A stretch of 63,287 nucleotides of DNA, counting the filler, from Octopus bimaculoides (lineage: Eukaryota), in the NCBI RefSeq assembly GCF_001194135.2. It is 7 parts of 6 records of this genome, joined end to end, with 100 filler letters (N's around TTAATTAATTAA, not from the genome) between each part and the next. Parts side by side here need not be neighbours in the genome. Positions count along the whole stretch, not along the records: positions 29,235 to 43,836 come from NC_068995.1; 6 more parts are not named here. One strand, 5' to 3'. Both the position numbers and the translations under genes were made by a program. Shown here one piece after another: positions 29,026 to 43,946 of the stretch. How positions within the stretch are numbered: the stretch's first letter is position 1; every line of letters begins with the position of its first letter. The notes below the pieces were generated by a model, which was given only the letters and a program-made list of their open reading frames with translations, was not told the origin of the DNA and did no database searches.

Positions 29026-29749
29026 GTAGTAGTAGTAGTAGTAGTGATTGTTGTAGTATTGGTAATATTGGTGGTGATGGTGGTGGTGGTGGTGGTGGTG
29101 GTGGTTGCAGATGAGTGAAAGAGTGTCGGGAAATNNNNNNNNNNNNNNNNNNNNNNNNNNNNNNNNNNNNNNNNNNNNTTAATTAATTAANNNNNNNNNN
29201 NNNNNNNNNNNNNNNNNNNNNNNNNNNNNNNNNNTATATATACACGTATGCACCAAAATCCAGGCTATTCATTAGGTGCATGCCTCTGTTTGCGGGTTGG
29301 AATCTGAAATCAGGAATCTACACTTTCATTTAGAATGATAAGAATTTTCGAGACGCTGTATTTAGGATTTTGAAATATTCCAAACGAACTTAACTCGTAT
29401 GATAACATCATGTAGTTACTTTAGACCTAATAGTAGAGATTTACGTTGATTTAGTTAAATGATATCCGAGTTCTGATGATGTACCGCTCAATGAGAGCAT
29501 TCTCAGCTTGTATAAACAGAACAGTCTATTTATAATAAGGCGATGTGTGGCACTGATTCTCCGTTACCTGCATAAAATAAGCCACTTGATATCAACTGTA
29601 AAGCATTCGAGAAATTTGTGTTAAATGCATATGTATATAGATGTAGGTTTGTTTTGTTTCTTACTAAATATTGACAAACTGTGTGGTAGGCCTAACACAG
29701 CGCCATTGCTTGGTTTAACACCTCCCCTCTGACTCTTGCGTGTTTTTAG

Positions 29750-29946
29750 CTGTGTCTCTATTCTGGTGCAACATCCGGATCAGTGATCTGTAGTGAAGAT
29801 ACGTGGCTTCCTAAAGAATTAATAGCAGCAGTAGCAGTCACAGCAACAGCAGCAGTGGTCGCAACAACAGCAAACCATAAGATTTGGTTTCTTCCTTCGT
29901 CTTCTTCTCCTACCACATATATCTTAGTAATATTGTCAAGGTCAAG
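29750..29946 (+). other. candidate spliced exon, ATG-free (5' UTR-like)
   Basis: gtgtttttAG acceptor and AAG|GTAAGT donor; 197 nt; no ATG; one frame is open. Confidence 0.35.
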
Positions 29947-30194
29947 GTAAGTAGCCTTCTTCGTACTAAGCTATAGAAAATTAAGATACCTAAATTAAAC
30001 AAACTATACGAAACTAATAGACAACTATTTGTAGTTTCAAGACGCCCCAATCGTTTTCTTTATCACATAATTTTCCAGCGGAAAGATTAAGTTTAAATAG
30101 CGATAACCGCACCTTCATTTCACCTTATTGGTTATGTTACCTTCTCTGAGCAAAATTAGGGAAGGAAATAACAAGAAAACTAAATGTACGACAT

Positions 30195-30562
30195 TTGTTG
30201 TTGGCACTCCATCGCTAACGGCGTCGAGGATTCCAGTTAATCCGATTAACGGAACAGCCTGCTCGTGAAATTAACGTGCAAGTGGCTGAGCACTCCACAG
30301 ACACGTGTACCCTTAATGTAGTTCTCGGGGATATTCAGCGTGACACAGTGTGACAAGGCTGACCCTTTGAATTACAGGCACAACAGAAACAGGAAAAGGG
30401 AGAGTTGTGGTGAAAGAGTACAGCAGGGTTCGCCACCGTACCCTGCCGGAGTCTCGTGGAGCTTTAGGTGTTTTCGCTCAATAAACACTCACAGCGCCCG
30501 GTATGGGAATCGAAACCGCGATCCTATGACCACGAGTCCGCTGCCCTAACCACTGGGCCATG
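30195..30562 (-). mobile_element. tRNA-derived SINE (family C variant)
   Basis: Minus-strand head tggcccagtggttagggcagcggactcgtggtcataggatcgcggtttcgattccc; 3' domain shared with 25990-26162. Confidence 0.85.
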
Positions 30563-30828
30563 TACGATATAACAACATAACATATTTATTTATATCAGTG
30601 ATCCTCAAAGACTTTCTATCTAGGGACACCTTTGATTTTGATTTTACTCTGGCGGGTCCCACTAGCCATTTGATGTAAGAAGAATAGTTTTTAGATACTT
30701 CTTTCGAAATTCCTAGCTTGTTTTTCACACGTTAACCTGTGTAGGTTTGTAATACCACCTTCTGAGGGAACATGTTTAACTGGCGGGAAACATGATTAAC
30801 CATGTAAAGCGTTGGGCAAATAAACCAA

Positions 30829-31050
30829 CAGTAACCCCTCGGCTATCGCGGGTTTTACGTTCCAAAACCCCGCTTAATACGTGAAAATCCGCGAAGTAGA
30901 AACATTACTGTTGTGTGTACATTTTTTTGTTATTTTTATAATTTTTGTATATTTATCGTATTATAAATGCCAAACAAAACTCAAAGGAATCGACGTAAGC
31001 TTAAATAATAAACCGCAATAGGTGAATCACGACATGGCAAAGGATTAATG
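30829..31050. mobile_element. Tigger/pogo-like MITE, possibly nested in a hAT-like MITE (~30596-31187)
   Basis: Left cagtaacccctcggctatcgcgg; right cacgacatggcaaaggattaatg-TA (decayed inverted copy); similar to the end at 47009. Confidence 0.5.
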
Positions 31051-31366
31051 TAGCTGCTTTTTACAACAAATGCACCCAATGAAAAATCTTTATGTGGATC
31101 CCTAAAATTATACCATGGACCCCAGTTTACTATTTTTCTTGCGTGGACTCCCAGAAGTCTTGTAGTCATCCCAGTCGAGAAGCCCAGACTTATATAGGTC
31201 TTTTTTAACATTTTCTTACATTGCTATGGGGCACCAATTTAGTTGAGAGCTTATAGTCAAATAAATTGTCTTCGATATTTGATTGACTGGTTCTTCATTC
31301 TATCGATCTTCATGTATATGCATACACATATGCATATATGTATGTATATATATATATATATATATA

Positions 31367-32755
31367 ATGCATGGTGCGTGTTATTTCAAAGTTTATGAAA
31401 ATAAGTTTTAATTTGTGAAACGAAAATTATGAATGTAGAGTGAATTTTCTTTCTTTTTATTCACTAAACTTTTCAATATTTTATATTGCTGTGACTGTGG
31501 AAGTGAAACATCGTAAAATGTATGTAAGGGAAACCCTCGTAAGGAAGAAATGAGGCTGTGCGATGTTATTTTGATCAAGATAAGAGTTAAGTAGGGCAGC
31601 AGAAGCATGCCTAGCCATATGAGTTATGTATTATATACAGACTGAGATTAGCTGCAATTATCCTTACCGAAGAATATTTCAGTCAGTAAATCAGCAAGGG
31701 ACCGTCTATGGGGCGTCTCCACGTAGGCCCACTACTTACAACGACTAAATATTCTTCAAATCACGCCCGAAAATGATAGATAAAAGAAAGACACGTTAAA
31801 TAATGGTGTCTTACTAAACACTAAAAGGAGGGCATGATTGCATGATTATGGTGGAAATGTTTCTGTTCTTCTCTCTATGGGATAAAATCTGACCTTGAGC
31901 TATATAACTGAAACAAAAACAAAACAATCTTTTTTTCGTTTACTAAAGAATTAGTAAACAATCTATTAAACAATCACCCAGTTCCTTGCCGTATTCTATC
32001 TCCGTGTGGTAATGGCAGCTATTATGGAAGTCCACCGATCAATTATTACACTCGTCTTACGAGTGTAAATAGCTTATTTATAAATCCTTTAATGAATAAA
32101 TAAAAATTTAATGTTCATAATAGGAAACGTACCTTACATACAATTAAATACATATGCATTTCGTTCATAAACATAATTCCTTCGACGTCTTAGATACAGT
32201 GAGTTAATGGAATTCAAAGAAAGTTGTTTAAACTTTTTGTTTTTGTTTTAGTTATGTAACTCAAGGTCAGCTTTTATCCCATAGAGAGATCAGAAACATT
32301 TCCACCATGATCATACAATCATGCCCTCTTTTTAGAATTTTGTAGGACACCATTAGTTAACGTGTCTTTCTCTTATCTATAATTTTCGGGTGTGATTTGA
32401 AGATTTAGTCGTTGTGTGTACAGGGCCTACCTAAAGACACCCCATAGACGTTCCCTCGCTGGTTTACTGACTGAAATATTCTTCGGTAAAGATAATTGCA
32501 ACTAATCTCAGTCTGCTGCCCTACTTAACTCTTATCTTGATCAAAATAACATCACACAGCCTCATTTCTTCCTTAAGACGGTTTCCCTTACATGCATTTT
32601 ACGATATTTCACTTTCCTAGTCACAGCAATACTGGAATAACAAAATATTGAAAAATTTAGTGGATAAAAAGAAAATAAATTCACTTTACATTCATAATTT
32701 TCGTTTCACGAATTAAAACTTATTTTCATAAACTTTGAAATAACACGCACCATGC

Positions 32756-32757
<2 letters not shown>
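31367..32757. repeat. large inverted repeat: arms ~31367-31930 and ~32220-32757, spacer ~290 bp
   Basis: Arms align along their whole length (about 85-95% by eye), with a 38-bp and a ~9-bp indel; (TA)n on both outer flanks. Confidence 0.95.
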
Positions 32758-32822
<65 letters not shown>

Positions 32823-34106
32823 TTCATATTATATATATAAATGCACGTATGTATGAATGACTATATATGTATACATATATTCACAAGCATACAGACTAAC
32901 ATCCAACTATATAATGTCAGATACTCATATGCATGTTTACATACCTAAATACACATATATCATATACCTACACACGCACACAGACACACAGACACACATA
33001 CATACATACATACATACATGAATACATACATACCCAAACGCATATATATGCGTGTATATGTGTGTGTGTGTTTATTATACGCTTCCCACTTTGGTAAACA
33101 TAAATATCTCTTGATATGACTCATATTGGAAGAAGACACCTTATGCTTGTCCCTATCTTTCAATTTCCAGAAAATAATTACCAAAGCGTCGAAAGATATT
33201 GGCTCCCAATAAAGCAGATTTCTATTTTGGGAAGAAATATTTTCACCCCACCTACTACACTTGAATACTACAATACACGGAAATAGGTACGAGTACAAAT
33301 AACCAAATACCATTGTGTCATTCTGGTAATAATGTACAGTAGCTTTCATATTAATGCAAAGCCTTATTTATTAATTTTATTTTAAAGGCAAAATCTCGAG
33401 AAGACGTTAATAAAGTATTTGAATAAAGCTCTCTTTCTATATCTCCATCACTTTCTGTCTTCCATACGTTCTTATCTCCCTTTCTTCCCCCCCCCACTCT
33501 CTCTTTCTTTCTTCCTTGCTCTGCTTTCCTTCTTCAGCTATCTCTTTCTCTTTCTTATAGCTTATTAACTAATTCAGGAAATGAATTCTATTGTTGAACT
33601 ACCAGTTTCAAAACGAGCATAATTGTAATAGAATCTTTTCGTATTTTAATATGTATGTAAAGCTCAAACGCGCGCAACCACACACACACACACACACACA
33701 CATATATACACACACACACACGCACTCACGTACACACACATGCAACACAGAAACGTACTTAAACATAGAACACACATTGTTCATGCATTCATGAAACGTT
33801 CACGGAAACACGCTTATGTACAACACACGCACGAATACATACAAACATTTCATACCATTTTACACGCATACATTCACAATAATGTGAGTAGAGAAGTTGG
33901 CGGTGGTCTTGCTGGTGATATTTGTGGTGGTGCTGGTGGTGCTGGTGGTGATTGTCATGGTAGTGGTGGTGTGGAAACAATGTAAAAGATAAGAGATATG
34001 ACGATATGGAGCTATTCTCTTAGAATAAACAATCATGAAAATAACCTTGAAATTATAAGTAATATAACAAAGAATATATGATACATATTACACATATTAT
34101 ACACAC

Positions 34107-34164
<58 letters not shown>

Positions 34165-34939
34165 NNNNNNNNNNNNNNNNNNNNNNNNNNNNNNNNNNNN
34201 NNNNNNNNNNNNNNNNNNNNNNNNNNNNNNNNNNNNNNNNNNNNNNNNNNNNNNNNNNNNNNNNNNNNNNNNNNNNNNNNNNNNNNNNNNNNNNNNNNNN
34301 NNNNNNNNNNNNNNNNNNNNNNNNNNNNNNNNNNNNNNNNNNNNNNNNNNNNNNNNNNNNNNNNNNNNNNNNNNNNNNNNNNNNNNNNNNNNNNNNNNNN
34401 NNNNNNNNNNNNNNNNNNNNNNNNNNNNNNNNNNNNNNNNNNNNNNNNNNNNNNNNNNNNNNNNNNNNNNNNNNNNNNNNNNNNNNNNNNNNNNNNNNNN
34501 NNNNNNNNNNNNNNNNNNNNNNNNNNNNNNNNNNNNNNNNNNNNNNNNNNNNNNNNNNNNNNNNNNNNNNNNNNNNNNNNNNNNNNNNNNNNNNNNNNNN
34601 NNNNNNNNNNNNNNNNNNNNNNNNNNNNNNNNNNNNNNNNNNNNNNNNNNNNNNNNNNNNNNNNNNNNNNNNNNNNNNNNNNNNNTATATGTATATACAT
34701 ATAGATATGTATGTATATACATGCAGACATATATACACATACACGCAGGCATGTGCGTGCGTGTATGTGTATGCATGAGTGCATGTGCATGTGTGAGTGT
34801 ATGTGTGTGTATACAAAGATTTGCAAAGTTTAGCTAAGGTGTATGAGAAATGATCTTTGAGAATGACATTTCGTATACTAATGGATTATTAGGTGGTTTT
34901 GCTTTTCGTTTTTTCTTTCTTTGTATCATTCTTTGTATC

Positions 34940-35090
34940 ATTCTTCTTCTTCTTCTTCTTCTTCTTCTTCTTCTTCTTCTTCTTCTTCTTCTTCTTCTTC
35001 TTCTTCTTCTTGTCCTCCTTCTCTTTCTTCTCTTCATCTTCATCATCTCTTCTTCTCTTTTTCCTTCTTCCTCGTCTTCTTCTTCTTCTT

Positions 35091-35121
<31 letters not shown>

Positions 35122-35151
35122 TTATTATTATTATTATTATTACTATTATTA

Positions 35152-35190
<39 letters not shown>

Positions 35191-35211
35191 TATCATCTTT
35201 AATATTATTAA

Positions 35212-35256
<45 letters not shown>

Positions 35257-35280
35257 TACTACTACTACCGCTACGACTAC
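34940..35280. repeat. (TTC)n/(TTA)n/(CTA)n compound microsatellite
   Basis: Directly visible. Confidence 0.95.
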
Positions 35281-36735
35281 TACTCTTTCTCTCCTTTTTA
35301 GCTAATATAGGCGCATAAGATTGATTCTTATCTTGCACGAACGACAGAAGTAATATAGGAAGAACTCGCGATGAATGAATAGAGCCGTTTTTCTTATATT
35401 TTCCATTCCTCTCTATCTAAATAGTAATATCATGACACACACACACATATATCTATATATACTCATTCCTCGCTACTCGCTCGTTCTCTCGAACCGATCG
35501 TTAATGAGGCTCTTCAGTTGTTAGTTTCGCTTCACGCAATCACGCCTATTTCTAGATAGTGAAAAAGACACTTAAAGCGCATGCGTCTATGTTCTTATTT
35601 GTATGGGTTTGTCTTTTCGCGCTTTTGTTTCGTTTATGTGCATGACTTGAATGATGCTTATGGAATAAATTCCATGAAATAAAATAAAAACAAATAAATA
35701 AATTACAAAAATCCAATACATAAAATAAAATAAAATAATATAAAATAAAATTAAAATGAAATAAAATAAAATGAAGAAGACGTAAAGCAAAGGAAAAGAG
35801 AAGTAAAGAAGAAAAATTAAATAAATAAGCAAAAGGAAAATTATAATATCTGACATTAACCTTTGGAATATCAAACAGAGATGCAAATTTTATATATTTG
35901 AACTTTGTATCCAAAATGCAAAATACGTAGCAATTTTCCGACATCTTGGGCAATAGTTAAATGATGAGACAATATATTATATATTATATATATATATATA
36001 TATATGCATGTATGTACGTAAACACACGCATACATACATACATATATGTATATGTATATANNNNNNNNNNNNNNNNNNNNNNNNNNNNNNNNNNNNNNNN
36101 NNNNNNNNNNNNNNNNNNNNNNNNNNNNNNNNNNNNNNNNNNNNNNNNNNNNNNNNNNNNNNNNNNNNNNNNNNNNNNNNNNNNNNNNNNNNNNNNNNNN
36201 NNNNNNNNNNNNNNNNNNNNNNNNNNNNNNNNNNNNNNNNNNNNNNNNNNNNNNNNNNNNNNNNNNNNNNNNNNNNNNNNNNNNNNNNNNNNNNNNNNNN
36301 NNNNNNNNNNNNNNNNNNNNNNNNNNNNNNNNNNNNNNNNNNNNNNNNNNNNNNNNNNNNNNNNNNNNNNNNNNNNNNNNNNNNNNNNNNNNNNNNNNNN
36401 NNNNNNNNNNNNNNNNNNNNNNNNNNNNNNNNNNNNNNNNNNNNNNNNNNNNNNNNNNNNNNNNNNNNNNNNNNNNNNNNNNNNNNNNNNNNNNNNNNNN
36501 NNNNNNNNNNNNNNNNNNNNNNNNNNNNNNNNNNNNNNNNNNNNNNNNNNNNNNNNNNNNNNNNNNNNNNNNNNNNNNNNNNNNNNNNNNNNNNNNNNNN
36601 NNNNNNNNNNNNNNNNNNNNNNNNNNNNNNNNNNNNNNNNNNNNNNNNNNNNNNNNNNNNNNNNNNNNNNNNNNNNTATATATATATATATATATTTGTA
36701 TCTTCTCGAATTGTTCCGGCCTCACACAACAAATC

Positions 36736-37016
36736 TCTGGGAGTTGTGGCGTGCTCTTGTAATCCAGCTACTCGGAAGATTGGTTATTTGGCCGGTTTGA
36801 GGATAAGCATCCTGGTAGTCGGTCTCCTATGGCTATCAGGCGTCCACGCTAAGCTCGGCATTAATATGCTGTTGGAGAGGGACCTGAGGTTCGATTTGGC
36901 TCAGAGACGAAACGCAACAGGCAAAAGACCCCGTGTCGAGCAGTAGTGGGATTGCGCCTGTGAATATTTGTCGGCTGACAGACTGTTCCCTACAACTGAA
37001 CACCAATCTCTCTTTT
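36736..37016 (+). ncRNA. RN7SL: 7SL (SRP) RNA-homologous sequence, probably a pseudogene or retrocopy
   Basis: Colinear with metazoan 7SL: Alu domain ctgggagttgtggcgtgctcttgtaatccagctactcgg; ctatggctatcaggcgtccacgctaagctcggcattaatatg; helix-8-like cgaaacgcaacagg; cagtagtgggattgcgcctgtgaata; ends tctctctttt. About 281 nt, with the helix 6/7 region roughly 20 nt shorter than human 7SL as I recall it. Confidence 0.88.
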
Positions 37017-37020
37017 CTCT

Positions 37021-37078
37021 GGTGGTGCTGCAGCATGGCCACATCTTTAGAACTGAAACATGAACAAGAATAACAGAT
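37021..37078 (+). mobile_element. terminal ~55 bp of a family B SINE tail directly after the 7SL sequence
   Basis: ggtggtgctgcagcatggccaca...actgaaaca versus ggtggtgctacagcatggccata...gactgaaaca at 62402-62441. Confidence 0.65.
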
Positions 37079-38784
37079 TATCTTGGCCTACAATAATAGA
37101 AGCTTCTCCGTATAATACAATTACGCATGTATGTAAATTATGTATTAAAGAATCTATAAATATTCTCCGTCGCTATAACTGTACATTATTGAATGAATTC
37201 TCGATGGCTATGTATTCTTAGATACATACATACCATCCAACATTTAAGCATTTTGATCAGTCTGGATAGATTGATCATTAAACTCTATAATTAGTTACAT
37301 TCCACCTAATATTTATACTCGCACCCCCACTCACCTTGCTCTTATGGGATAATTACTTGCTTATAATCTACCAATTTTCTAAATTTACTTCCCATAATTC
37401 TCGCTATAATATTTCCTGTTCCTGCTAACACGTATAGCATTTTATAAAACCAAATACCCGTTTACTCATTATGACAGTATATGAGATGTGAATCCTTAAC
37501 TAATACATTATCCTTGATGAAGGAGGCAGTCTCTAAAATTTGGATAGAAGCATCCTTTAATTGTGTGGATTATTGTACCCTTGAAACGTCGGAGAATCAC
37601 CATTTAATTCTTGAAATTGGAGTAACGCCAGCTAATCATTGGAAACTTTACCTTCCGTATGAATGTTTAAACATTTCTTTATTCACCTTTACGCGAGGAT
37701 TTACACTTTTATTTTTAATGTATATTATCAATATCTCTTTAACAACGCTGTTATTCTGTAAGTAGGGCGATGTCTTCAATATACACCTTTTAAGACACTA
37801 ATATATTTTTTATACATCAATATAATTCTTCTGCCGATATATGTCTATTATATTTTTATATATTTATGTATTTATAAATTTCTAATATTTTTCTATATGT
37901 TAATTGGTGATACATTAAATATATTTTATTTGGTTTTATGGCTAAGCATATATTGTATCATTATTATATTCAATTTTATGATTGAGTATATGTTGTATTA
38001 TCATTCTAAATTGTTGAAACAGCCTGAATTCTCCTTATATATATATATATNNNNNNNNNNNNNNNNNNNNNNNNNNNNNNNNNNNNNNNNNNNNNNNNNN
38101 NNNNNNNNNNNNNNNNNNNNNNNNNNNNNNNNNNNNNNNNNNNNNNNNNNNNNNNNNNNNNNNNNNNNNNNNNNNNNNNNNNNNNNNNNNNNNNNNNNNN
38201 NNNNNNNNNNNNNNNNNNNNNNNNNNNNNNNNNNNNNNNNNNNNNNNNNNNNNNNNNNNNNNNNNNNNNNNNNNNNNNNNNNNNNNNNNNNNNNNACTAC
38301 CTTTAACAGGTAATTTTAAACGCTAGAAGAAGCAGTCAAAACGACCAAAACCAAATTGAAGAGAAATTTCAAAGGGAATGAAAAATATAAACTTTTACCT
38401 TGTTATTTTTGTATGGTTATACCTAGGTTTACGATATTTTTAGCAAGAGCAATTCAAACGAACGAATAAAAAGGGATAAAAGTACCTGCATAAAACAAGC
38501 ATTAATCTATACAAGTTGTATTCATTAAAGATTTCCCCTGACCCGCTTCTCAAGGAAACTGGTATAATTATGTGACCTCTGGACTGAAACAACTGTAAGA
38601 TATTATTCCAATTTCTATTACTATATGTTATATTTTTATAATTACTGATATAAGACATAATATGTCATATGTGTTTGTATATTGCTATAATTGTCCGCTT
38701 AATAAATAAACAAGTAAATTGACATAATATAATGTCTATTATTTGATGAAAATCACCTATTAATCCCCTCCATTTTCTTTTTAG

Positions 38785-38873
<89 letters not shown>

Positions 38874-38948
38874 NNNNNNNNNNNNNNNNAGTTAGCTTTT
38901 TTTATATTTCACGGTAGGCAACCGGAGTTGCCGGGTATGCGAATGAGA

Positions 38949-39000
<52 letters not shown>

Positions 39001-39691
39001 ACGTACATACAAACGCATATAACCACAAATGCCATTCCCAAATGATCACGGCACAGTAGCATGTACCACGTTTCGCAAATTGCTTTATTGTTTTAGGTGC
39101 CTATATTGTTCGGAGCAGACAAAGACGTACCTCTCAGCCCAGTGAACCATGCTTTCATTCGGCGAGACACATTAGCTGAAGTAGGAAACGTTCGTATCAC
39201 ACTTGGTGTTACTTGTATTCAGCTGAGTAGATTGGAGCATTGTTAATTTTAGCTAATTGTTCAGAGGTGCTACGCGCTAACTCATCCTCCAATTGAACAC
39301 ACAACCTTATGAACCTCAGACCAACATTTTAACCACTAGATCTTCTTACACTCACCCATGTACAAACATGCTTACACACACACATACGTAATCCCATCAA
39401 CGCACCACACGTTTAATTTCAGCAACTCTCCTGTTTATTTACATAACTGCTTGTATAATATTTTAATACATATTTGTGGTAACGTGCAGCTGGACTGCAT
39501 AATTAGTTCGTCACATAGAAATGCGATATATGTTTATATGTTGCATGGCTATACATACATACATACATACATACATACATACACAATCTTTATGTGTAAA
39601 TATGCGTATATATATAAATATATATATACTAACCTACATACACCCACACGCCACATAGTCTTGTCTTTTAGTTAGGTTAGGTTTCTCCAGC

Positions 39692-39723
<32 letters not shown>

Positions 39724-40144
39724 NNNNNNNNNNNNNNNNNNNNNNNNNNNNNNNNNNNNNNNNNNNNNNNNNNNNNNNNNNNNNNNNNNNNNNNNNNNNN
39801 NNNNNNNNNNNNNNNNNNNNNNNNNNNNNNNNNNNNNNNNNNNNNNNNNNNNNNNNNNNNNNNNNNNNNNNNNNNNNNNNNNNNNNNNNNNNNNNNNNNN
39901 NNNNNNNNNNNNNNNNNNNNNNNNNNNNNNNNNNNNNNNNNNNNNNNNNNNNNNNNNNNNNNNNNNNNNNNNNNNNNNNNNNNNNNNNNNNNNNNNNNNN
40001 NNNNNNNNNNNNNNNNNNNNNNNNNNNNNNNNNNNNNNNNNNNNNNNNNNNNNNNNNNNNNNNNNNNNNNNNNNNNNNNNNNNNNNNNNNNNNNNNNNNN
40101 NNNNNNNNNNNNNNNNNNNNNNNTATATAGTGAGAATTTACAAA

Positions 40145-40300
40145 AAACAAAAAACAAAAGACGAAGACGGGCGTGTAAACAACAAACGGATGTATTAGTT
40201 TAACACTCGGGAAATGAGAAAGTCTTACGTTTCGAGCCTACGCACTTCGACAGAAATGAACACAGAAATAAACAGGGAGAGAAAATAAAAAAAAGATTTA
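40145..40300 (-). mobile_element. Penelope-like terminal repeat fragment
   Basis: Homologous to 14470-14570; the minus strand carries a decayed hammerhead-like ...cgaag-gcgtaggctc-gaaacgt. Confidence 0.5.
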
Positions 40301-40344
40301 GTTGCTAGCCCACAAACACATACACATTCCTATATATATATATG

Positions 40345-40470
40345 TATAAGTAATGTGAAATGAAGTGTTTTGCTCAACAACAAAACTCATCGCTCTGTCT
40401 CGGAATTGAAACCGAAATCCTACGATTATGAGTTCATTCCCCTAACTGCTAAGCCACGCGCTTCCACGCT
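40345..40470 (-). mobile_element. family C SINE head (another decayed copy at ~39200-39345)
   Basis: Minus strand gcgcgtggcttagcagttaggg...tttcggtttcaattcc...ttgagcaaaacac. Confidence 0.65.
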
Positions 40471-41091
40471 TAGAGAACAATACTGTTCAGACCTGAACAC
40501 CTACTATCGTTGGTCTGTAAAAGAGCCAATACTAACCTCTTACTAGAAAACGAGCGCTTCTACGAGAAAATGACACTAGAATATCTCCGCGCCAATAAAA
40601 GAGCTTCAATTCCAATCGCACGACCCCTTTAAACATAGCCATTGATAAGGGATTGATAAGGTTGGAAATAACAGCGAAAGAACTTTTTGGCAAGCAAAAA
40701 CAAAACAATCGGATATTTAATAAATGAGTGGAATTGAACCAGCCAGTGTGTTTGTTACATTGGCATAAGTACTCATAACGACTCTCCCTAAACAACAAAA
40801 TAGCAGTAATTTTTTTTCGTAAATCAAACCATATCATCCTTAAAAAAAAATTACGATATCTTCCATGATGCAAAATCCTCGATATTTTATACTTGAAAGA
40901 AACGACGGATGAGTGTAGTAAACTCGATAAGGAGTTCATATGGTTAATCGACAAATAAATCTATAAGAATCAAAATATATACCAGCGTGTCAATCAAATA
41001 AATAGTTTTTTACTCATATTTTTTCTTCTGTAGACGTGCTGCTATCGGTACTATTTGCAGTGGAGTTCTTTCAGGGAGGAAAAATATCAAT

Positions 41092-41502
41092 TTCTTTCTT
41101 TGTTGCCCACAGGGGACTAAAAACAGAGGGAATAAACAAGTTCAGACAAAGGGATACCTCGACCCCAGTGCGTAACTGGTACTTATTCAATCGACCCTGA
41201 AAGGATGAAAGGCAAAATCGACCTCAGCAGAATTTGATCTCAGAACGGGCGAAATACTGATAAGTATTTTGCCCTGTGTACGAACGATTCTATTCTACTC
41301 TAGGCACAAGGCTCGAAATTTTGAGGGAGGGGGCCAATCGATTAGATCGACCTCAGTACGCAACTGGTACTTAATTTATGGACCCCGAAAAGATGAAAGG
41401 CAAAGTTGACCTCGGCGGAATTTGAACTCAAAACGTAAAGACAGACGAAATACCTCTAAGCATTTCTTCCGGCGTACTAATGATTTTGCCAGCACACCAC
41501 CT
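41092..41502 (-). mobile_element. family A SINE head-to-tail dimer
   Basis: Two units joined at 41287/41288 (minus strand ...gtagaatagaa|tcgttcgtacacaggg). Confidence 0.85.
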
Positions 41503-41849
41503 TATGGAGAAGAAAAAATATCATCTGAGCCAAAACTAGAGAGTTGGCAGTAATGATGGATAAACAATGTTTGAATGATGAATGCTAATTACAAGGGGCG
41601 GAGCCAGGATTATGGTTGCCGAGAGCGTAGCGGAATTTGAAAACAGGAAAGGATATCTAACAAAAACAAACAGTTATTCGAGTACAATATGATAAAATAC
41701 TGTATGAAATTTACCAGTGGGTTGGTGTTAGGTTTCTTCTTTGCTCTTTGCCGAACTTACCACAGATTTATGCTTCGTAACAAACTTTGCCGATTTCAAA
41801 ACATAATACGTTAACTTTGGTTTTCATTATTATTTTATTGAGGTAACTA

Positions 41850-42140
41850 TAGTATGCACTTGTTAACTGAAGCAACTGTTTGGTCCGGAAGAAGTGGTTG
41901 TGTCTATGACCTTTGCAGTTCAGTTTCTCACCCTTTTCTTGGCAACCAGTATGGTTTCCGTAGATCTACATCTGATGGAGTCTCATATGTAAGTAGTGGG
42001 CCCACGCCACTAGGAATTTCGGTGTCAGTTGGTAAAGTTTTTACAGTTGACATCAACTAAGTTGCACACTAATGATCTAAATTCGTCTTACATTTCCTTT
42101 ATTGAAAGCTTTCTGTCGGACGTACTTGAGTATGAGCTTA
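41850..42140 (+). mobile_element. decayed CR1/Jockey-group reverse transcriptase fragment
   Basis: Translation FLGNQYGFRRSTSDGVSYV resembles the QYGFR..RST RT motif, followed by VDIN* (cf. LDISKAFD); many stops. Confidence 0.45.
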
Positions 42141-43743
42141 TCTACTTTCACGTAGATGAAATTTGATAGCTTCATGAGACGTAGAGAGAGAGAATGTGTT
42201 TGCAGAGAGTCGAAATCGGTGATGGTAAGGTCTACCTATCGAATTACAAAGAGGGTGCTGAACACTTACCAACCGGGAAATTTCATACAAAAGTTTTTCG
42301 AAGGTTTTCAGGTAACTATTCAGTCTCGTTACCCTTTTTTTGTTTCCAAATTTCGCACAACCATAATTTTGGTCCCTTCTAATTAGTATTAATCATTACA
42401 AATACAAATGCAATCCACCAGACGGGTTTCCACACAGTTTCTTTCTCTCCCAAATCACTCACAACTAATGGAACGACTTGATGTACCAAAATGAACAACA
42501 AGCAACGTTAACATCCTCGATAAGATACGAACTCAAAACCTAAAGATAATCAACTAAATTTCGATACTTCAGCATCCAAAACGCTGGAAACCAGTAAATA
42601 AATAAATGAATACATAAAATTTATCATTCTNNNNNNNNNNNNNNNNNNNNNNNNNNNNNNNNNNNNNNNNNNNNNNNNNNNNNNNNNNNNNNNNNNNNNN
42701 NNNNNNNNNNNNNNNNNNNNNNNNNNNNNNNNNNNNNNNNNNNNNNNNNNNNNNNNNNNNNNNNNNNNNNNNNNNNNNNNNNNNNNNNNNNNNNNNNNNN
42801 NNNNNNNNNNNNNNNNNNNNNNNNNNNNNNNNNNNNNNNNNNNNNNNNNNNNNNNNNNNNNNNNNNNNNNNNNNNNNNNNNNNNNNNNNNNNNNNNNNNN
42901 NNNNNNNNNNNNNNNNNNNNNNNNNNNNNNNNNNNNNNNNNNNNNNNNNNNNNNNNNNNNNNNNNNNNNNNNNNNNNNNNNNNNNNNNNNNNNNNNNNNN
43001 NNNNNNNNNNNNNNNNNNNNNNNNNNNNNNNNNNNNNNNNNNNNNNNNNNNNNNNNNNNNNNNNNNNNNNNNNNNNNNNNNNNNNNNNNNNNNNNNNNNN
43101 NNNNNNNNNNNNNNNNNNNNNNNNNNNNNNNNNNNNNNNNNNNNNNNNNNNNNNNNNNNNNNNNNNNNNNNNNNNNNNNNNNNNNNNNNNNNNNNNNNNN
43201 NNNNNNNNNNNNNNNNNNNNNNNNNNNNNNNNNNNNNNNNNNNNNNNNNNNNNNNNNNNNNNNNNNNNNNNNNNNNNNNNNNNNNNNNNNNNNNNNNNNN
43301 NNNNNNNNNNNNNNNNNNNNNNNNNNNNNNNNNNNNNNNNNNNNNNNNNNNNNNNNNNNNNNNNNNNNNNNNNNNNNNNNNNNNNNNNNNNNNNNNNTAT
43401 ATATGTATTATGTATGTATGTATGCATGTATCTGTAAGATGTATGCGTGCGTGCGCTTGTGTACTTCTTCAAGAATAATTCGTTTCCCAAAAAATTATTC
43501 CCTTATTTTCTTCAAACTTTGCATGTAAATGTCAAATAAAAATAAAGTTCATTCTCACAAACAACACAAACACACACACACACACACGCACACACACGCA
43601 TACATACATACACATAAAACCCCTATGTGCACTCACGCAAGTACACCACATGTATAATTACTTTTTAAAGATTATGCTTGCATATGTAAGCGCACCAAAA
43701 TGTGTTCACTTATTAACACATGTATGCACGCACATACATTACG

Positions 43744-43796
<53 letters not shown>

Positions 43797-43946
43797 CATT
43801 ACACATACACACACACACACGTATATATATATATATNNNNNNNNNNNNNNNNNNNNNNNNNNNNNNNNNNNNNNNNNNNNTTAATTAATTAANNNNNNNN
43901 NNNNNNNNNNNNNNNNNNNNNNNNNNNNNNNNNNNNATATAGATAA

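What the first reader, a model, noticed from the sequence alone, without database searches (positions are those of the whole stretch)
36736..37078. 7SL RNA sequence fused to a SINE 3' tail: possible 7SL-derived (SINE1-like) or template-switch chimera in a mollusc
Seen: a nearly complete 7SL homologue with a shortened, altered S-domain is followed within ~5 nt by the last ~55 bp of the abundant family B SINE tail. No other part of that SINE lies upstream, and no clear TSD is visible. Established: 7SL-derived SINEs are best known from primates/rodents (Alu, B1) and few other lineages; SINE tails supply the LINE-recognition signal; RT template switching makes snRNA-LINE chimeras. Inference: either a one-off chimera or a member of an unrecognised 7SL-headed retroposon family.
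Basis: partly seen in the sequence, partly recalled or inferred. Interest (0 to 1): 0.7.

Follow-up and report, generated by a model that had tools for sequence, protein, structure and literature searches.

The report
Decayed 7SL pseudogene fused to retroposon tail
An octopus-type scaffold carries one worn-out copy of the signal-recognition-particle (7SL) RNA joined end-to-end to the last ~58 bases of a common octopus retroposon tail, most likely a one-off accident of reverse transcription and not shown to be a new Alu-like repeat family.

Summary
Rfam finds a full-length metazoan SRP (7SL) RNA match at 36736-37011 (134.7 bits, model 1-299), followed by C+TTTT (37012-37016) and 4 nt (CTCT). 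Then 37021-37078 aligns in register with the 3' terminal module of real octopus retroposons fetched from O. vulgaris and O. sinensis (68-80% identity; score 22 against 7.4±1.3 for shuffles).

The 7SL part is not a working gene. Helix 6 is lost (about 22 nt missing). Both conserved Gs of the helix 8 symmetric loop are changed, and two pairs next to its GAAA tetraloop are broken. In all, 21 of about 100 normally canonical pairs and 10 of 59 highly conserved positions are broken or changed.

No target-site duplication is detectable under any model. Only 59 bp of upstream sequence precede an assembly gap.

Best reading (about 0.45): an old chimeric retropseudogene, made when a LINE reverse transcriptase switched from a retroposon tail to 7SL RNA. 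Rivals:
- a truncated tail inserted by chance next to a 7SL pseudogene (about 0.2);
- a member of an undescribed 7SL-headed family (about 0.2), disfavoured by the T4 terminator between head and tail, the retained S domain and the decay.

No tool here could search octopus genomes by DNA, so copy number remains untested.

The parts
36677..36735 (+). The only real sequence upstream of the 7SL copy (59 bp; a (TA)n run, then unique sequence). An assembly gap (N) lies at 36061-36676.
   Evidence: There is no TATA-like motif around -30, and no match to the downstream flank above chance.
36736..37011 (+). Full-length but decayed 7SL (SRP) RNA homologue.
   Evidence: Rfam RF00017, 134.7 bits, model 1-299. 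79 of 106 model pairs are canonical and 10 of 59 highly conserved positions are changed.
36862..36886 (+). Remnant of the helix 6 region: 25 nt where the model has about 47. A GGAG and a GGGACC remain, but there is no complementary strand.
   Evidence: cmscan alignment (32 model positions replaced by 5) and direct reading of the sequence.
36887..36932 (+). Helix 8 homologue with its GAAA tetraloop at 36909-36912. The conserved AGG reads AGA (A at 36905) and AGCA reads AACA (A at 36917). Two pairs next to the tetraloop are broken.
   Evidence: alignment positions 169 and 181 G->A; pairs 171-178 and 172-177 non-canonical.
37012..37016 (+). 3' terminal C plus a TTTT run (37013-37016): the Pol III terminator, equivalent to the U-tail of the 7SL transcript.
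   Evidence: Sequence. It lies directly after model position 299.
37017..37020 (+). CTCT, four junction bases that match neither the 7SL model nor the tail module.
37021..37078 (+). 5'-truncated 3' terminal module (about 58 nt) shared by octopus SINE/LINE-type retroposons, in the same orientation as the 7SL.
   Evidence: Alignment A1. Score 22 against shuffles 7.4±1.3. 43/54 identical to the 3' end of O. vulgaris transcript comp3394, and 35/48 and 35/53 to the L002 SINE copies. Matches positions 337-393 of a 393-nt probe.

Best explanation
This is an old, inactive chimeric retropseudogene.

Proposed mechanism: during target-primed reverse transcription, an octopus LINE reverse transcriptase began copying the 3' terminal module of a SINE or LINE RNA. 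After about 58 nt it jumped to the 3' end of a 7SL RNA that still carried its oligo-U tail, and copied it to its 5' end. The integrated product reads 5'-7SL-UUUU-(4 nt)-tail-3'. It has since decayed neutrally, including a roughly 22-nt deletion that removed helix 6.

Shown here:
- a full-length 7SL homologue;
- its decay;
- the T4 run;
- the 4-nt junction;
- homology of the downstream 58 nt to the 3' end of real octopus retroposons;
- the shared orientation of the two parts.

Inferred: the RNA-level origin, the template switch, a single event, and neutrality since insertion.
For: The 7SL match covers model positions 1-299 and is followed at once by its T-run, as expected for a copy of a whole Pol III transcript.

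The tail homology starts 4 nt later and runs to the retroposon's own 3' end. It is in the same orientation, with no other part of that retroposon upstream.

Tail-only, 5'-truncated copies of this module exist in Octopus genomes, so reverse transcription often stops or switches early.

The two parts are similarly worn. About 17% of highly conserved 7SL positions are changed, and the tail is 20-32% from its relatives.

The 7SL cannot be the working gene (helix 6 lost, helix 8 motifs mutated), so a pseudogene origin is needed.

Precedent in the literature:
- U6/L1 chimeras, and more rarely 7SL/L1 chimeras, in primates (bioRxiv 10.1101/2025.02.02.635956);
- the same mechanism in a fungus (PMC2104539);
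- template switching proposed for module exchange in mollusc SINEs (PMC4758252).

Rough odds, my inference: tails occur about once per 8 kb in the sample. Chance placement of a truncated tail within 5 nt of a given point, in the right orientation, is therefore of order 1e-4 to 1e-3. That is below the percent-level share of chimeras among small-RNA pseudogenes in mammals.
Against: No target-site duplication flanks the chimera. The best flank match is at chance level (34% of random positions score as high). The two full SINE copies examined also lack visible TSDs, so this test has little power.

The four bases CTCT at the junction are unexplained.

The complete TTTT fits a genomic gene with its terminator as well as it fits a nascent transcript.

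Only 59 bp of upstream sequence are available before a gap.

No empty site, orthologous locus or second copy could be examined.
Confidence: 0.45

Rival explanations
1. Two unrelated events. A 7SL pseudogene (a retrocopy or a DNA duplicate of the gene with its terminator) later received, by chance or by some target preference, a severely 5'-truncated retroposon insertion 4 nt downstream of its T-run.
For: Tail-only copies of about 50 nt exist elsewhere, for example L002 7270-7345 next to another truncated SINE. The full TTTT plus CTCT could simply be the genomic 3' flank of a 7SL gene copy. A weak imperfect match, TTTTCTCTGG / TTATCTTGG, brackets the tail alone (my reading).
Against: That bracket match is at chance level (45% of random positions score as high). 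Exact abutment in the same orientation is improbable, of order 1e-4 to 1e-3 per locus at the tail density seen (inference). The tail's 5' end, not its 3' end, abuts the T-run. That is not what a T-rich endonuclease target would give.
Confidence: 0.2
2. A decayed member of an undescribed 7SL-headed retroposon family (SINE1-like) of octopods. The 7SL head supplies the Pol III promoter and the shared tail module recruits a LINE.
For: The architecture is a small-RNA head plus a LINE/SINE-type tail. The hagfish SINE1 arose this way, as a chimera of 7SL and an older SINE (PMC7245038). The 5' Alu-domain part is the best preserved: 1 of 23 highly conserved positions is changed in model positions 1-48, against 9 of 36 elsewhere (Fisher p about 0.04 by my estimate). 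Finding such an element in one small scaffold is more likely if copies are many (inference).
Against: A T4 Pol III terminator lies between head and tail. A transcript driven from the head would therefore mostly end before the tail. Helix 8 of the S domain is retained, unlike Alu, B1 and SINE1-1_EBu. Several helix 5 pairs near the Alu domain are broken.

No second copy was found in any sample:
- the 11.9 kb of real sequence in the piece;
- 73 kb of three Octopus genomes;
- the stored O. vulgaris transcript text, which has several tails but no 7SL strings.

Spurious-ORF searches found no close relatives either, but their positive control failed.
Confidence: 0.2
3. The authentic, expressed SRP RNA gene of the animal, with lineage-specific helices, followed by unrelated DNA.
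For: The full-length Rfam match is above the gathering score, and a T4 terminator sits exactly at the 3' end.
Against: Helix 6, the SRP19 binding site and universal in eukaryotic SRP RNA (established knowledge), cannot form. The conserved AGG/AGCA symmetric-loop motif of helix 8 is mutated on both sides, and the stem under the GAAA loop is broken. 21 of about 100 normally canonical pairs are lost. The fold is no more stable than shuffled sequence. There is no TATA-like element near -30 in the 59 bp available.
Confidence: 0.03

Closest known systems
Chimeric retropseudogenes made by LINE reverse-transcriptase template switching (U6/L1 and the rarer 7SL/L1 chimeras of primates; MINE chimeras of Magnaporthe)
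   Same: A full-length small Pol III RNA copy at the 5' side is fused directly, in the same orientation, to a 5'-truncated 3' end of a retroelement. It is a single dead copy.
   Different: The 3' partner here is a non-L1, stringent-type tail module of octopus SINE/LINE families, not an L1 3' end with poly(A). No TSD is visible. Four unexplained bases sit at the junction. The host is a mollusc, for which I found no such report.
SINE1: 7SL-derived SINEs (Alu, B1 and relatives in Euarchontoglires; SINE1-1_EBu of hagfish, PMC7245038)
   Same: A 7SL-derived 5' part joined to a tail taken from another SINE/LINE. The hagfish family is thought to have begun as exactly such a chimera.
   Different: Known SINE1 have lost the whole S domain, keep a foldable Alu domain, lack an internal terminator and exist in thousands of copies. 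Here helix 8 is kept, helix 5 pairing is eroded, a T4 separates head and tail, and only one copy is known.
Ordinary 7SL pseudogenes (Ullu and Weiner 1984, as cited in the text shown)
   Same: A mutated, internally deleted copy of 7SL RNA outside the functional locus.
   Different: It is followed by a retroposon tail module instead of an A-rich tract or plain flank.

Membership tests
Metazoan SRP (7SL) RNA, functional gene | Sequence and structure match to RF00017 above the gathering score, over the full length | tested here: met
   134.7 bits against 70, model 1-299.
Metazoan SRP (7SL) RNA, functional gene | Helix 6 hairpin (SRP19 site) present | tested here: not met
   32 model positions are replaced by 5. 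The remaining 25 nt have no complementary strands.
Metazoan SRP (7SL) RNA, functional gene | Helix 8 conserved symmetric-loop motifs (AGG / AGCA) and a closed GNAR tetraloop stem | tested here: not met
   The motifs read AGA and AACA. Pairs 171-178 and 172-177 are non-canonical.
Metazoan SRP (7SL) RNA, functional gene | Upstream promoter elements and expression | not testable with these tools
   Only 59 bp lie before the N gap at 36061-36676, and there are no expression data.
SINE1 (7SL-derived SINE) | 5' head derived from 7SL RNA | tested here: met
SINE1 (7SL-derived SINE) | 3' tail shared with a partner LINE or other SINEs | tested here: met
   37021-37078 matches the terminal module of at least three different octopus elements. 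The LINE partner itself was not identified.
SINE1 (7SL-derived SINE) | Dispersed family: many copies with the same head-tail junction | tested here: inconclusive
   No second copy in the piece, in 73 kb of Octopus loci, or in the stored transcript text. The sample is far too small, and no genome-wide DNA search was possible.
SINE1 (7SL-derived SINE) | Pol III transcript can run from head through tail (no internal terminator) | tested here: not met
   TTTT at 37013-37016 lies between head and tail. This copy is decayed, so the state of a putative master copy is unknown.
SINE1 (7SL-derived SINE) | S domain deleted and a foldable Alu domain retained | tested here: not met
   Helix 8 is retained. 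Of the Alu-proximal pairs of helix 5, 46-273, 51-268, 52-267, 54-265 and 57-263 are non-canonical.
Template-switch chimeric retropseudogene | 5' part is a complete small-RNA copy from its first base to its 3' end | tested here: met
   Model positions 1-299 plus the U-tract.
Template-switch chimeric retropseudogene | 3' part is a 5'-truncated retroelement 3' end, same orientation, joined directly | tested here: met
   The tail covers the last 57 nt of a 393-nt probe and ends at the element's end. The junction gap is 4 nt.
Template-switch chimeric retropseudogene | One target-site duplication flanking the whole chimera | tested here: inconclusive
   Best score 5, and 34% of random positions do as well. 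Two full SINE copies also show none.
Template-switch chimeric retropseudogene | Both parts absent together at the empty site in a relative | not testable with these tools
   No DNA search of octopod genomes was available.

The most novel reading that the evidence does not exclude
The locus is a worn copy, or a founder-stage relic, of a 7SL-headed retroposon family in octopods. That would be a third independent birth of SINE1 and the first in an invertebrate. It would have formed, as in hagfish, by fusion of 7SL RNA to the tail module of pre-existing tRNA-derived SINEs.
Probability: 0.17. Interest if true: 0.8.

Novelty: new member of a known kind. Interest (0 to 1): 0.35.

Why it matters
If it is a one-off chimera, it is a small but clean example outside mammals and fungi, and outside L1. 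It would show that a LINE reverse transcriptase can jump from a retroposon tail onto 7SL RNA. That step is thought to have created Alu-like families (PMC7245038).

If a genome-wide count showed many copies with this junction, it would be a new, invertebrate origin of 7SL-derived SINEs. Those are so far reported only from Euarchontoglires and hagfish (PMC10886601).

As it stands it is a single dead element with no sign of function.

Tried and rejected
Searches for other copies through spurious ORFs:
- Exact look-ups of five window ORFs found nothing on record.
- A homology search with the junction-spanning ORF found nothing. The positive control with a SINE ORF also found nothing, so this route is uninformative.
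- A full HMMER scan with the 7SL plus-frame ORF gave only spurious ORFs over 7SL genes of other eukaryotes, at most 52% identical.

DNA pattern scans:
- The tail pattern in JGI metagenomes gave one chance hit in a bacterial contig.
- A 7SL 17-mer in prokaryote genomes gave six chance hits, and none in viral contigs.

Literature string searches:
- The tail sequence is not printed in any main text.
- Six 7SL strings were absent from the stored O. vulgaris transcript supplement, at two word lengths.

TSD searches were at chance under three boundary models. A shared 7-mer, TCTCTGG, at the 7SL start and after the T-run is what chance gives (about 1 expected).

Rfam on the three Octopus loci found no 7SL. 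ARAGORN found no tRNA in the piece.

They were used only to fetch or locate real sequence. All comparisons reported are to fetched sequence or to text in a paper's supplement.

Full report
**What is there.** The piece (29235-43836) is a gap-ridden, microsatellite-rich scaffold with six N runs; one of them, 36061-36676, ends 59 bp upstream of the feature.

Rfam gives a single hit in the piece: Metazoa_SRP RF00017 at 36736-37011 on the + strand. It scores 134.7 bits (gathering score 70), E 6e-35, covers model positions 1-299 of 299, and is not truncated. The result was repeated with permissive filters.

Directly after the last model position come C and TTTT (37012-37016), then CTCT (37017-37020), then GGTGGTGCTGCAGCATGGCC....

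**Whose genome.** Two antisense copies of a tRNA-type SINE lie at 41155-41247 and 41284-41497. They are 86-90% identical to copies in loci I fetched from three species:
- Octopus vulgaris (L002, OX597836.1);
- O. bimaculoides (L003, CM046623.1);
- O. sinensis (L004, CM016881.1).

The window is therefore from an Octopus-like genome, but the species cannot be named.

**Is the tail real?** The tail has no second copy in the piece. It found two full-length copies in L002 (19342-19750 on +, 20154-20532 on -) and their orthologues in L004, but none in L003. The same probe matched window 37021-37077 with its last 57 of 393 positions.

Aligned to the real copies, the window tail is in register from GG(T/C)GGTGCT through CAGCATGGCC and CTGAAAC to the A-rich end (alignment A1). 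Identities and scores are:
- 35/53 and 35/48 to the two L002 copies;
- 31/42 to a tail-only copy at L002 7270-7345;
- local score 22, against 7.4±1.3 (maximum 15) for 5000 shuffles.

The closest relative found is the 3' end of O. vulgaris transcript comp3394_c0_seq1, printed in supplement file 3 of PMC9115989. It is 43/54 identical without gaps, but its body differs from the SINE. The tail is therefore a 3' terminal module shared by several octopus retroposon families. The window carries only that module, starting 4 nt after the 7SL T-run.

**Is the 7SL a working gene?** No. Parsing the cmscan alignment gives 79 of 106 model pairs canonical. Six of the 27 exceptions are also non-canonical in the consensus, so 21 of about 100 normally canonical pairs are broken. 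Ten of 59 highly conserved positions are changed.

The helix 6 region is 25 nt where the model has about 47. A GGAG and a GGGACC remain, but no complementary strand.

In helix 8 the conserved AGG reads AGA and AGCA reads AACA. Two pairs next to the GAAA tetraloop are lost.

The whole RNA folds no better than shuffled sequence: z = -0.27, with 73 of 200 shuffles as stable.

Helix 6 and the helix 8 motifs are universal in eukaryotic SRP RNA (established knowledge). This is a pseudogene or a derived element, not the SRP RNA gene. I had no bona fide mollusc 7SL to calibrate these counts, and that weakens them.

**How the two parts came together.** Three facts point to an RNA-level fusion:
- the 7SL copy is complete from position 1 to its U-tract;
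- the retroposon part is only its extreme 3' end;
- the two are in the same orientation, 4 nt apart.

This is the anatomy of template-switch chimeras. The reverse transcriptase starts on a retroelement 3' end, then jumps to the 3' end of an abundant small RNA. Precedents are:
- U6/L1 and rare 7SL/L1 chimeras in primates (bioRxiv 10.1101/2025.02.02.635956);
- chimeric retrogenes in Magnaporthe (PMC2104539);
- the same mechanism invoked for module exchange in mollusc SINEs (PMC4758252).

Early stopping or switching on this module does occur in Octopus. A tail-only copy of about 50 nt plus (GAAAT)n sits next to a truncated SINE in O. vulgaris and O. sinensis.

The two parts are about equally worn: 17% of highly conserved 7SL positions are changed, and the tail is 20-32% from its relatives.

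**What does not fit or cannot be tested.** No target-site duplication is detectable for the whole chimera, for the tail alone, or for the 7SL alone. In each case 34-45% of random positions score as well. The two full SINE copies examined also show none, so this test has little power.

The CTCT at the junction is unexplained. A full TTTT fits a genomic terminator as well as it fits a nascent transcript. The upstream flank is cut by a gap.

**The family hypothesis.** SINE1 is reported only from Euarchontoglires and hagfish (PMC10886601; PMC7245038), so an octopod family would be notable.

Against it:
- the T4 between head and tail would stop most Pol III transcripts before the tail;
- helix 8 of the S domain is retained, unlike all known SINE1;
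- several helix 5 pairs near the Alu domain are broken;
- no second copy turned up in the piece, in 73 kb of three Octopus genomes, or in the stored transcript text, where tail strings occur several times and 7SL strings never.

For it:
- the head-plus-tail architecture itself;
- the better preservation of the first 48 positions, where 1 of 23 conserved positions is changed against 9 of 36 elsewhere.

The samples are tiny relative to a genome of gigabase size, and no tool here could search octopus genomes by DNA. I leave this reading at about 0.2.

**Verdict.**
- An old one-off 7SL / retroposon-tail chimeric retropseudogene is the best explanation (about 0.45).
- Chance juxtaposition of a 7SL pseudogene and a truncated tail: about 0.2.
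- A 7SL-headed family: about 0.2.
- A functional gene: about 0.03.

The remaining probability is unassigned.

It is a new member of a known kind and of modest interest, unless a genome-wide count shows a family.

Noticed in passing
window 31312-31869 and 32287-32812: Inverted-repeat arms of about 560 nt, 88-93% complementary, separated by 417 nt, with (TA)n at both outer ends (I16-I19). There is no match in the three Octopus loci. It may be a foldback element, an inverted duplication or an assembly artefact.
   Followed up: no
window 41155-41247 and 41284-41497: Two adjacent antisense copies (one truncated) of a tRNA-type octopus SINE, 86-90% identical to copies in O. vulgaris, O. bimaculoides and O. 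sinensis. They identify the genome as Octopus-like.
   Followed up: partly
L002 7270-7345 (-) and L004 about 7030-7105 (-): A tail-only copy (about 50 nt plus (GAAAT)n) of the same tail module abuts a 5'-truncated SINE of the other family in the opposite orientation. It is shared by O. vulgaris and O. sinensis and may be a second composite junction.
   Followed up: partly
O. vulgaris transcript comp3394_c0_seq1 (supplement file 3 of PMC9115989): Its 3' end carries the tail variant closest to the window (43/54) behind a body unlike the SINE. The tail is therefore a module shared by several retroposon families, and this transcript may be the 3' end of the partner LINE.
   Followed up: partly
L002 19342-19750 (+) and 20154-20532 (-); L004 equivalents: Two full SINE copies in inverted orientation about 400 bp apart, present in O. 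vulgaris and O. sinensis. None is found in the O. bimaculoides rhodopsin locus L003. Neither copy shows a TSD.
   Followed up: partly
window 34100-34164, 34930-35270, 38818-38873, 38945-38996: Long (AC)n, (TTC)n/(TTA)n and (GT)n microsatellites. Several abut assembly gaps, which suggests the gaps are caused by simple repeats.
   Followed up: no
P0001 (137 aa): A spurious ORF from an unknown eukaryote that contains two tandem 7SL-derived units (the same 53-residue stretch twice). This implies tandemly repeated 7SL-like DNA in that organism.
   Followed up: no
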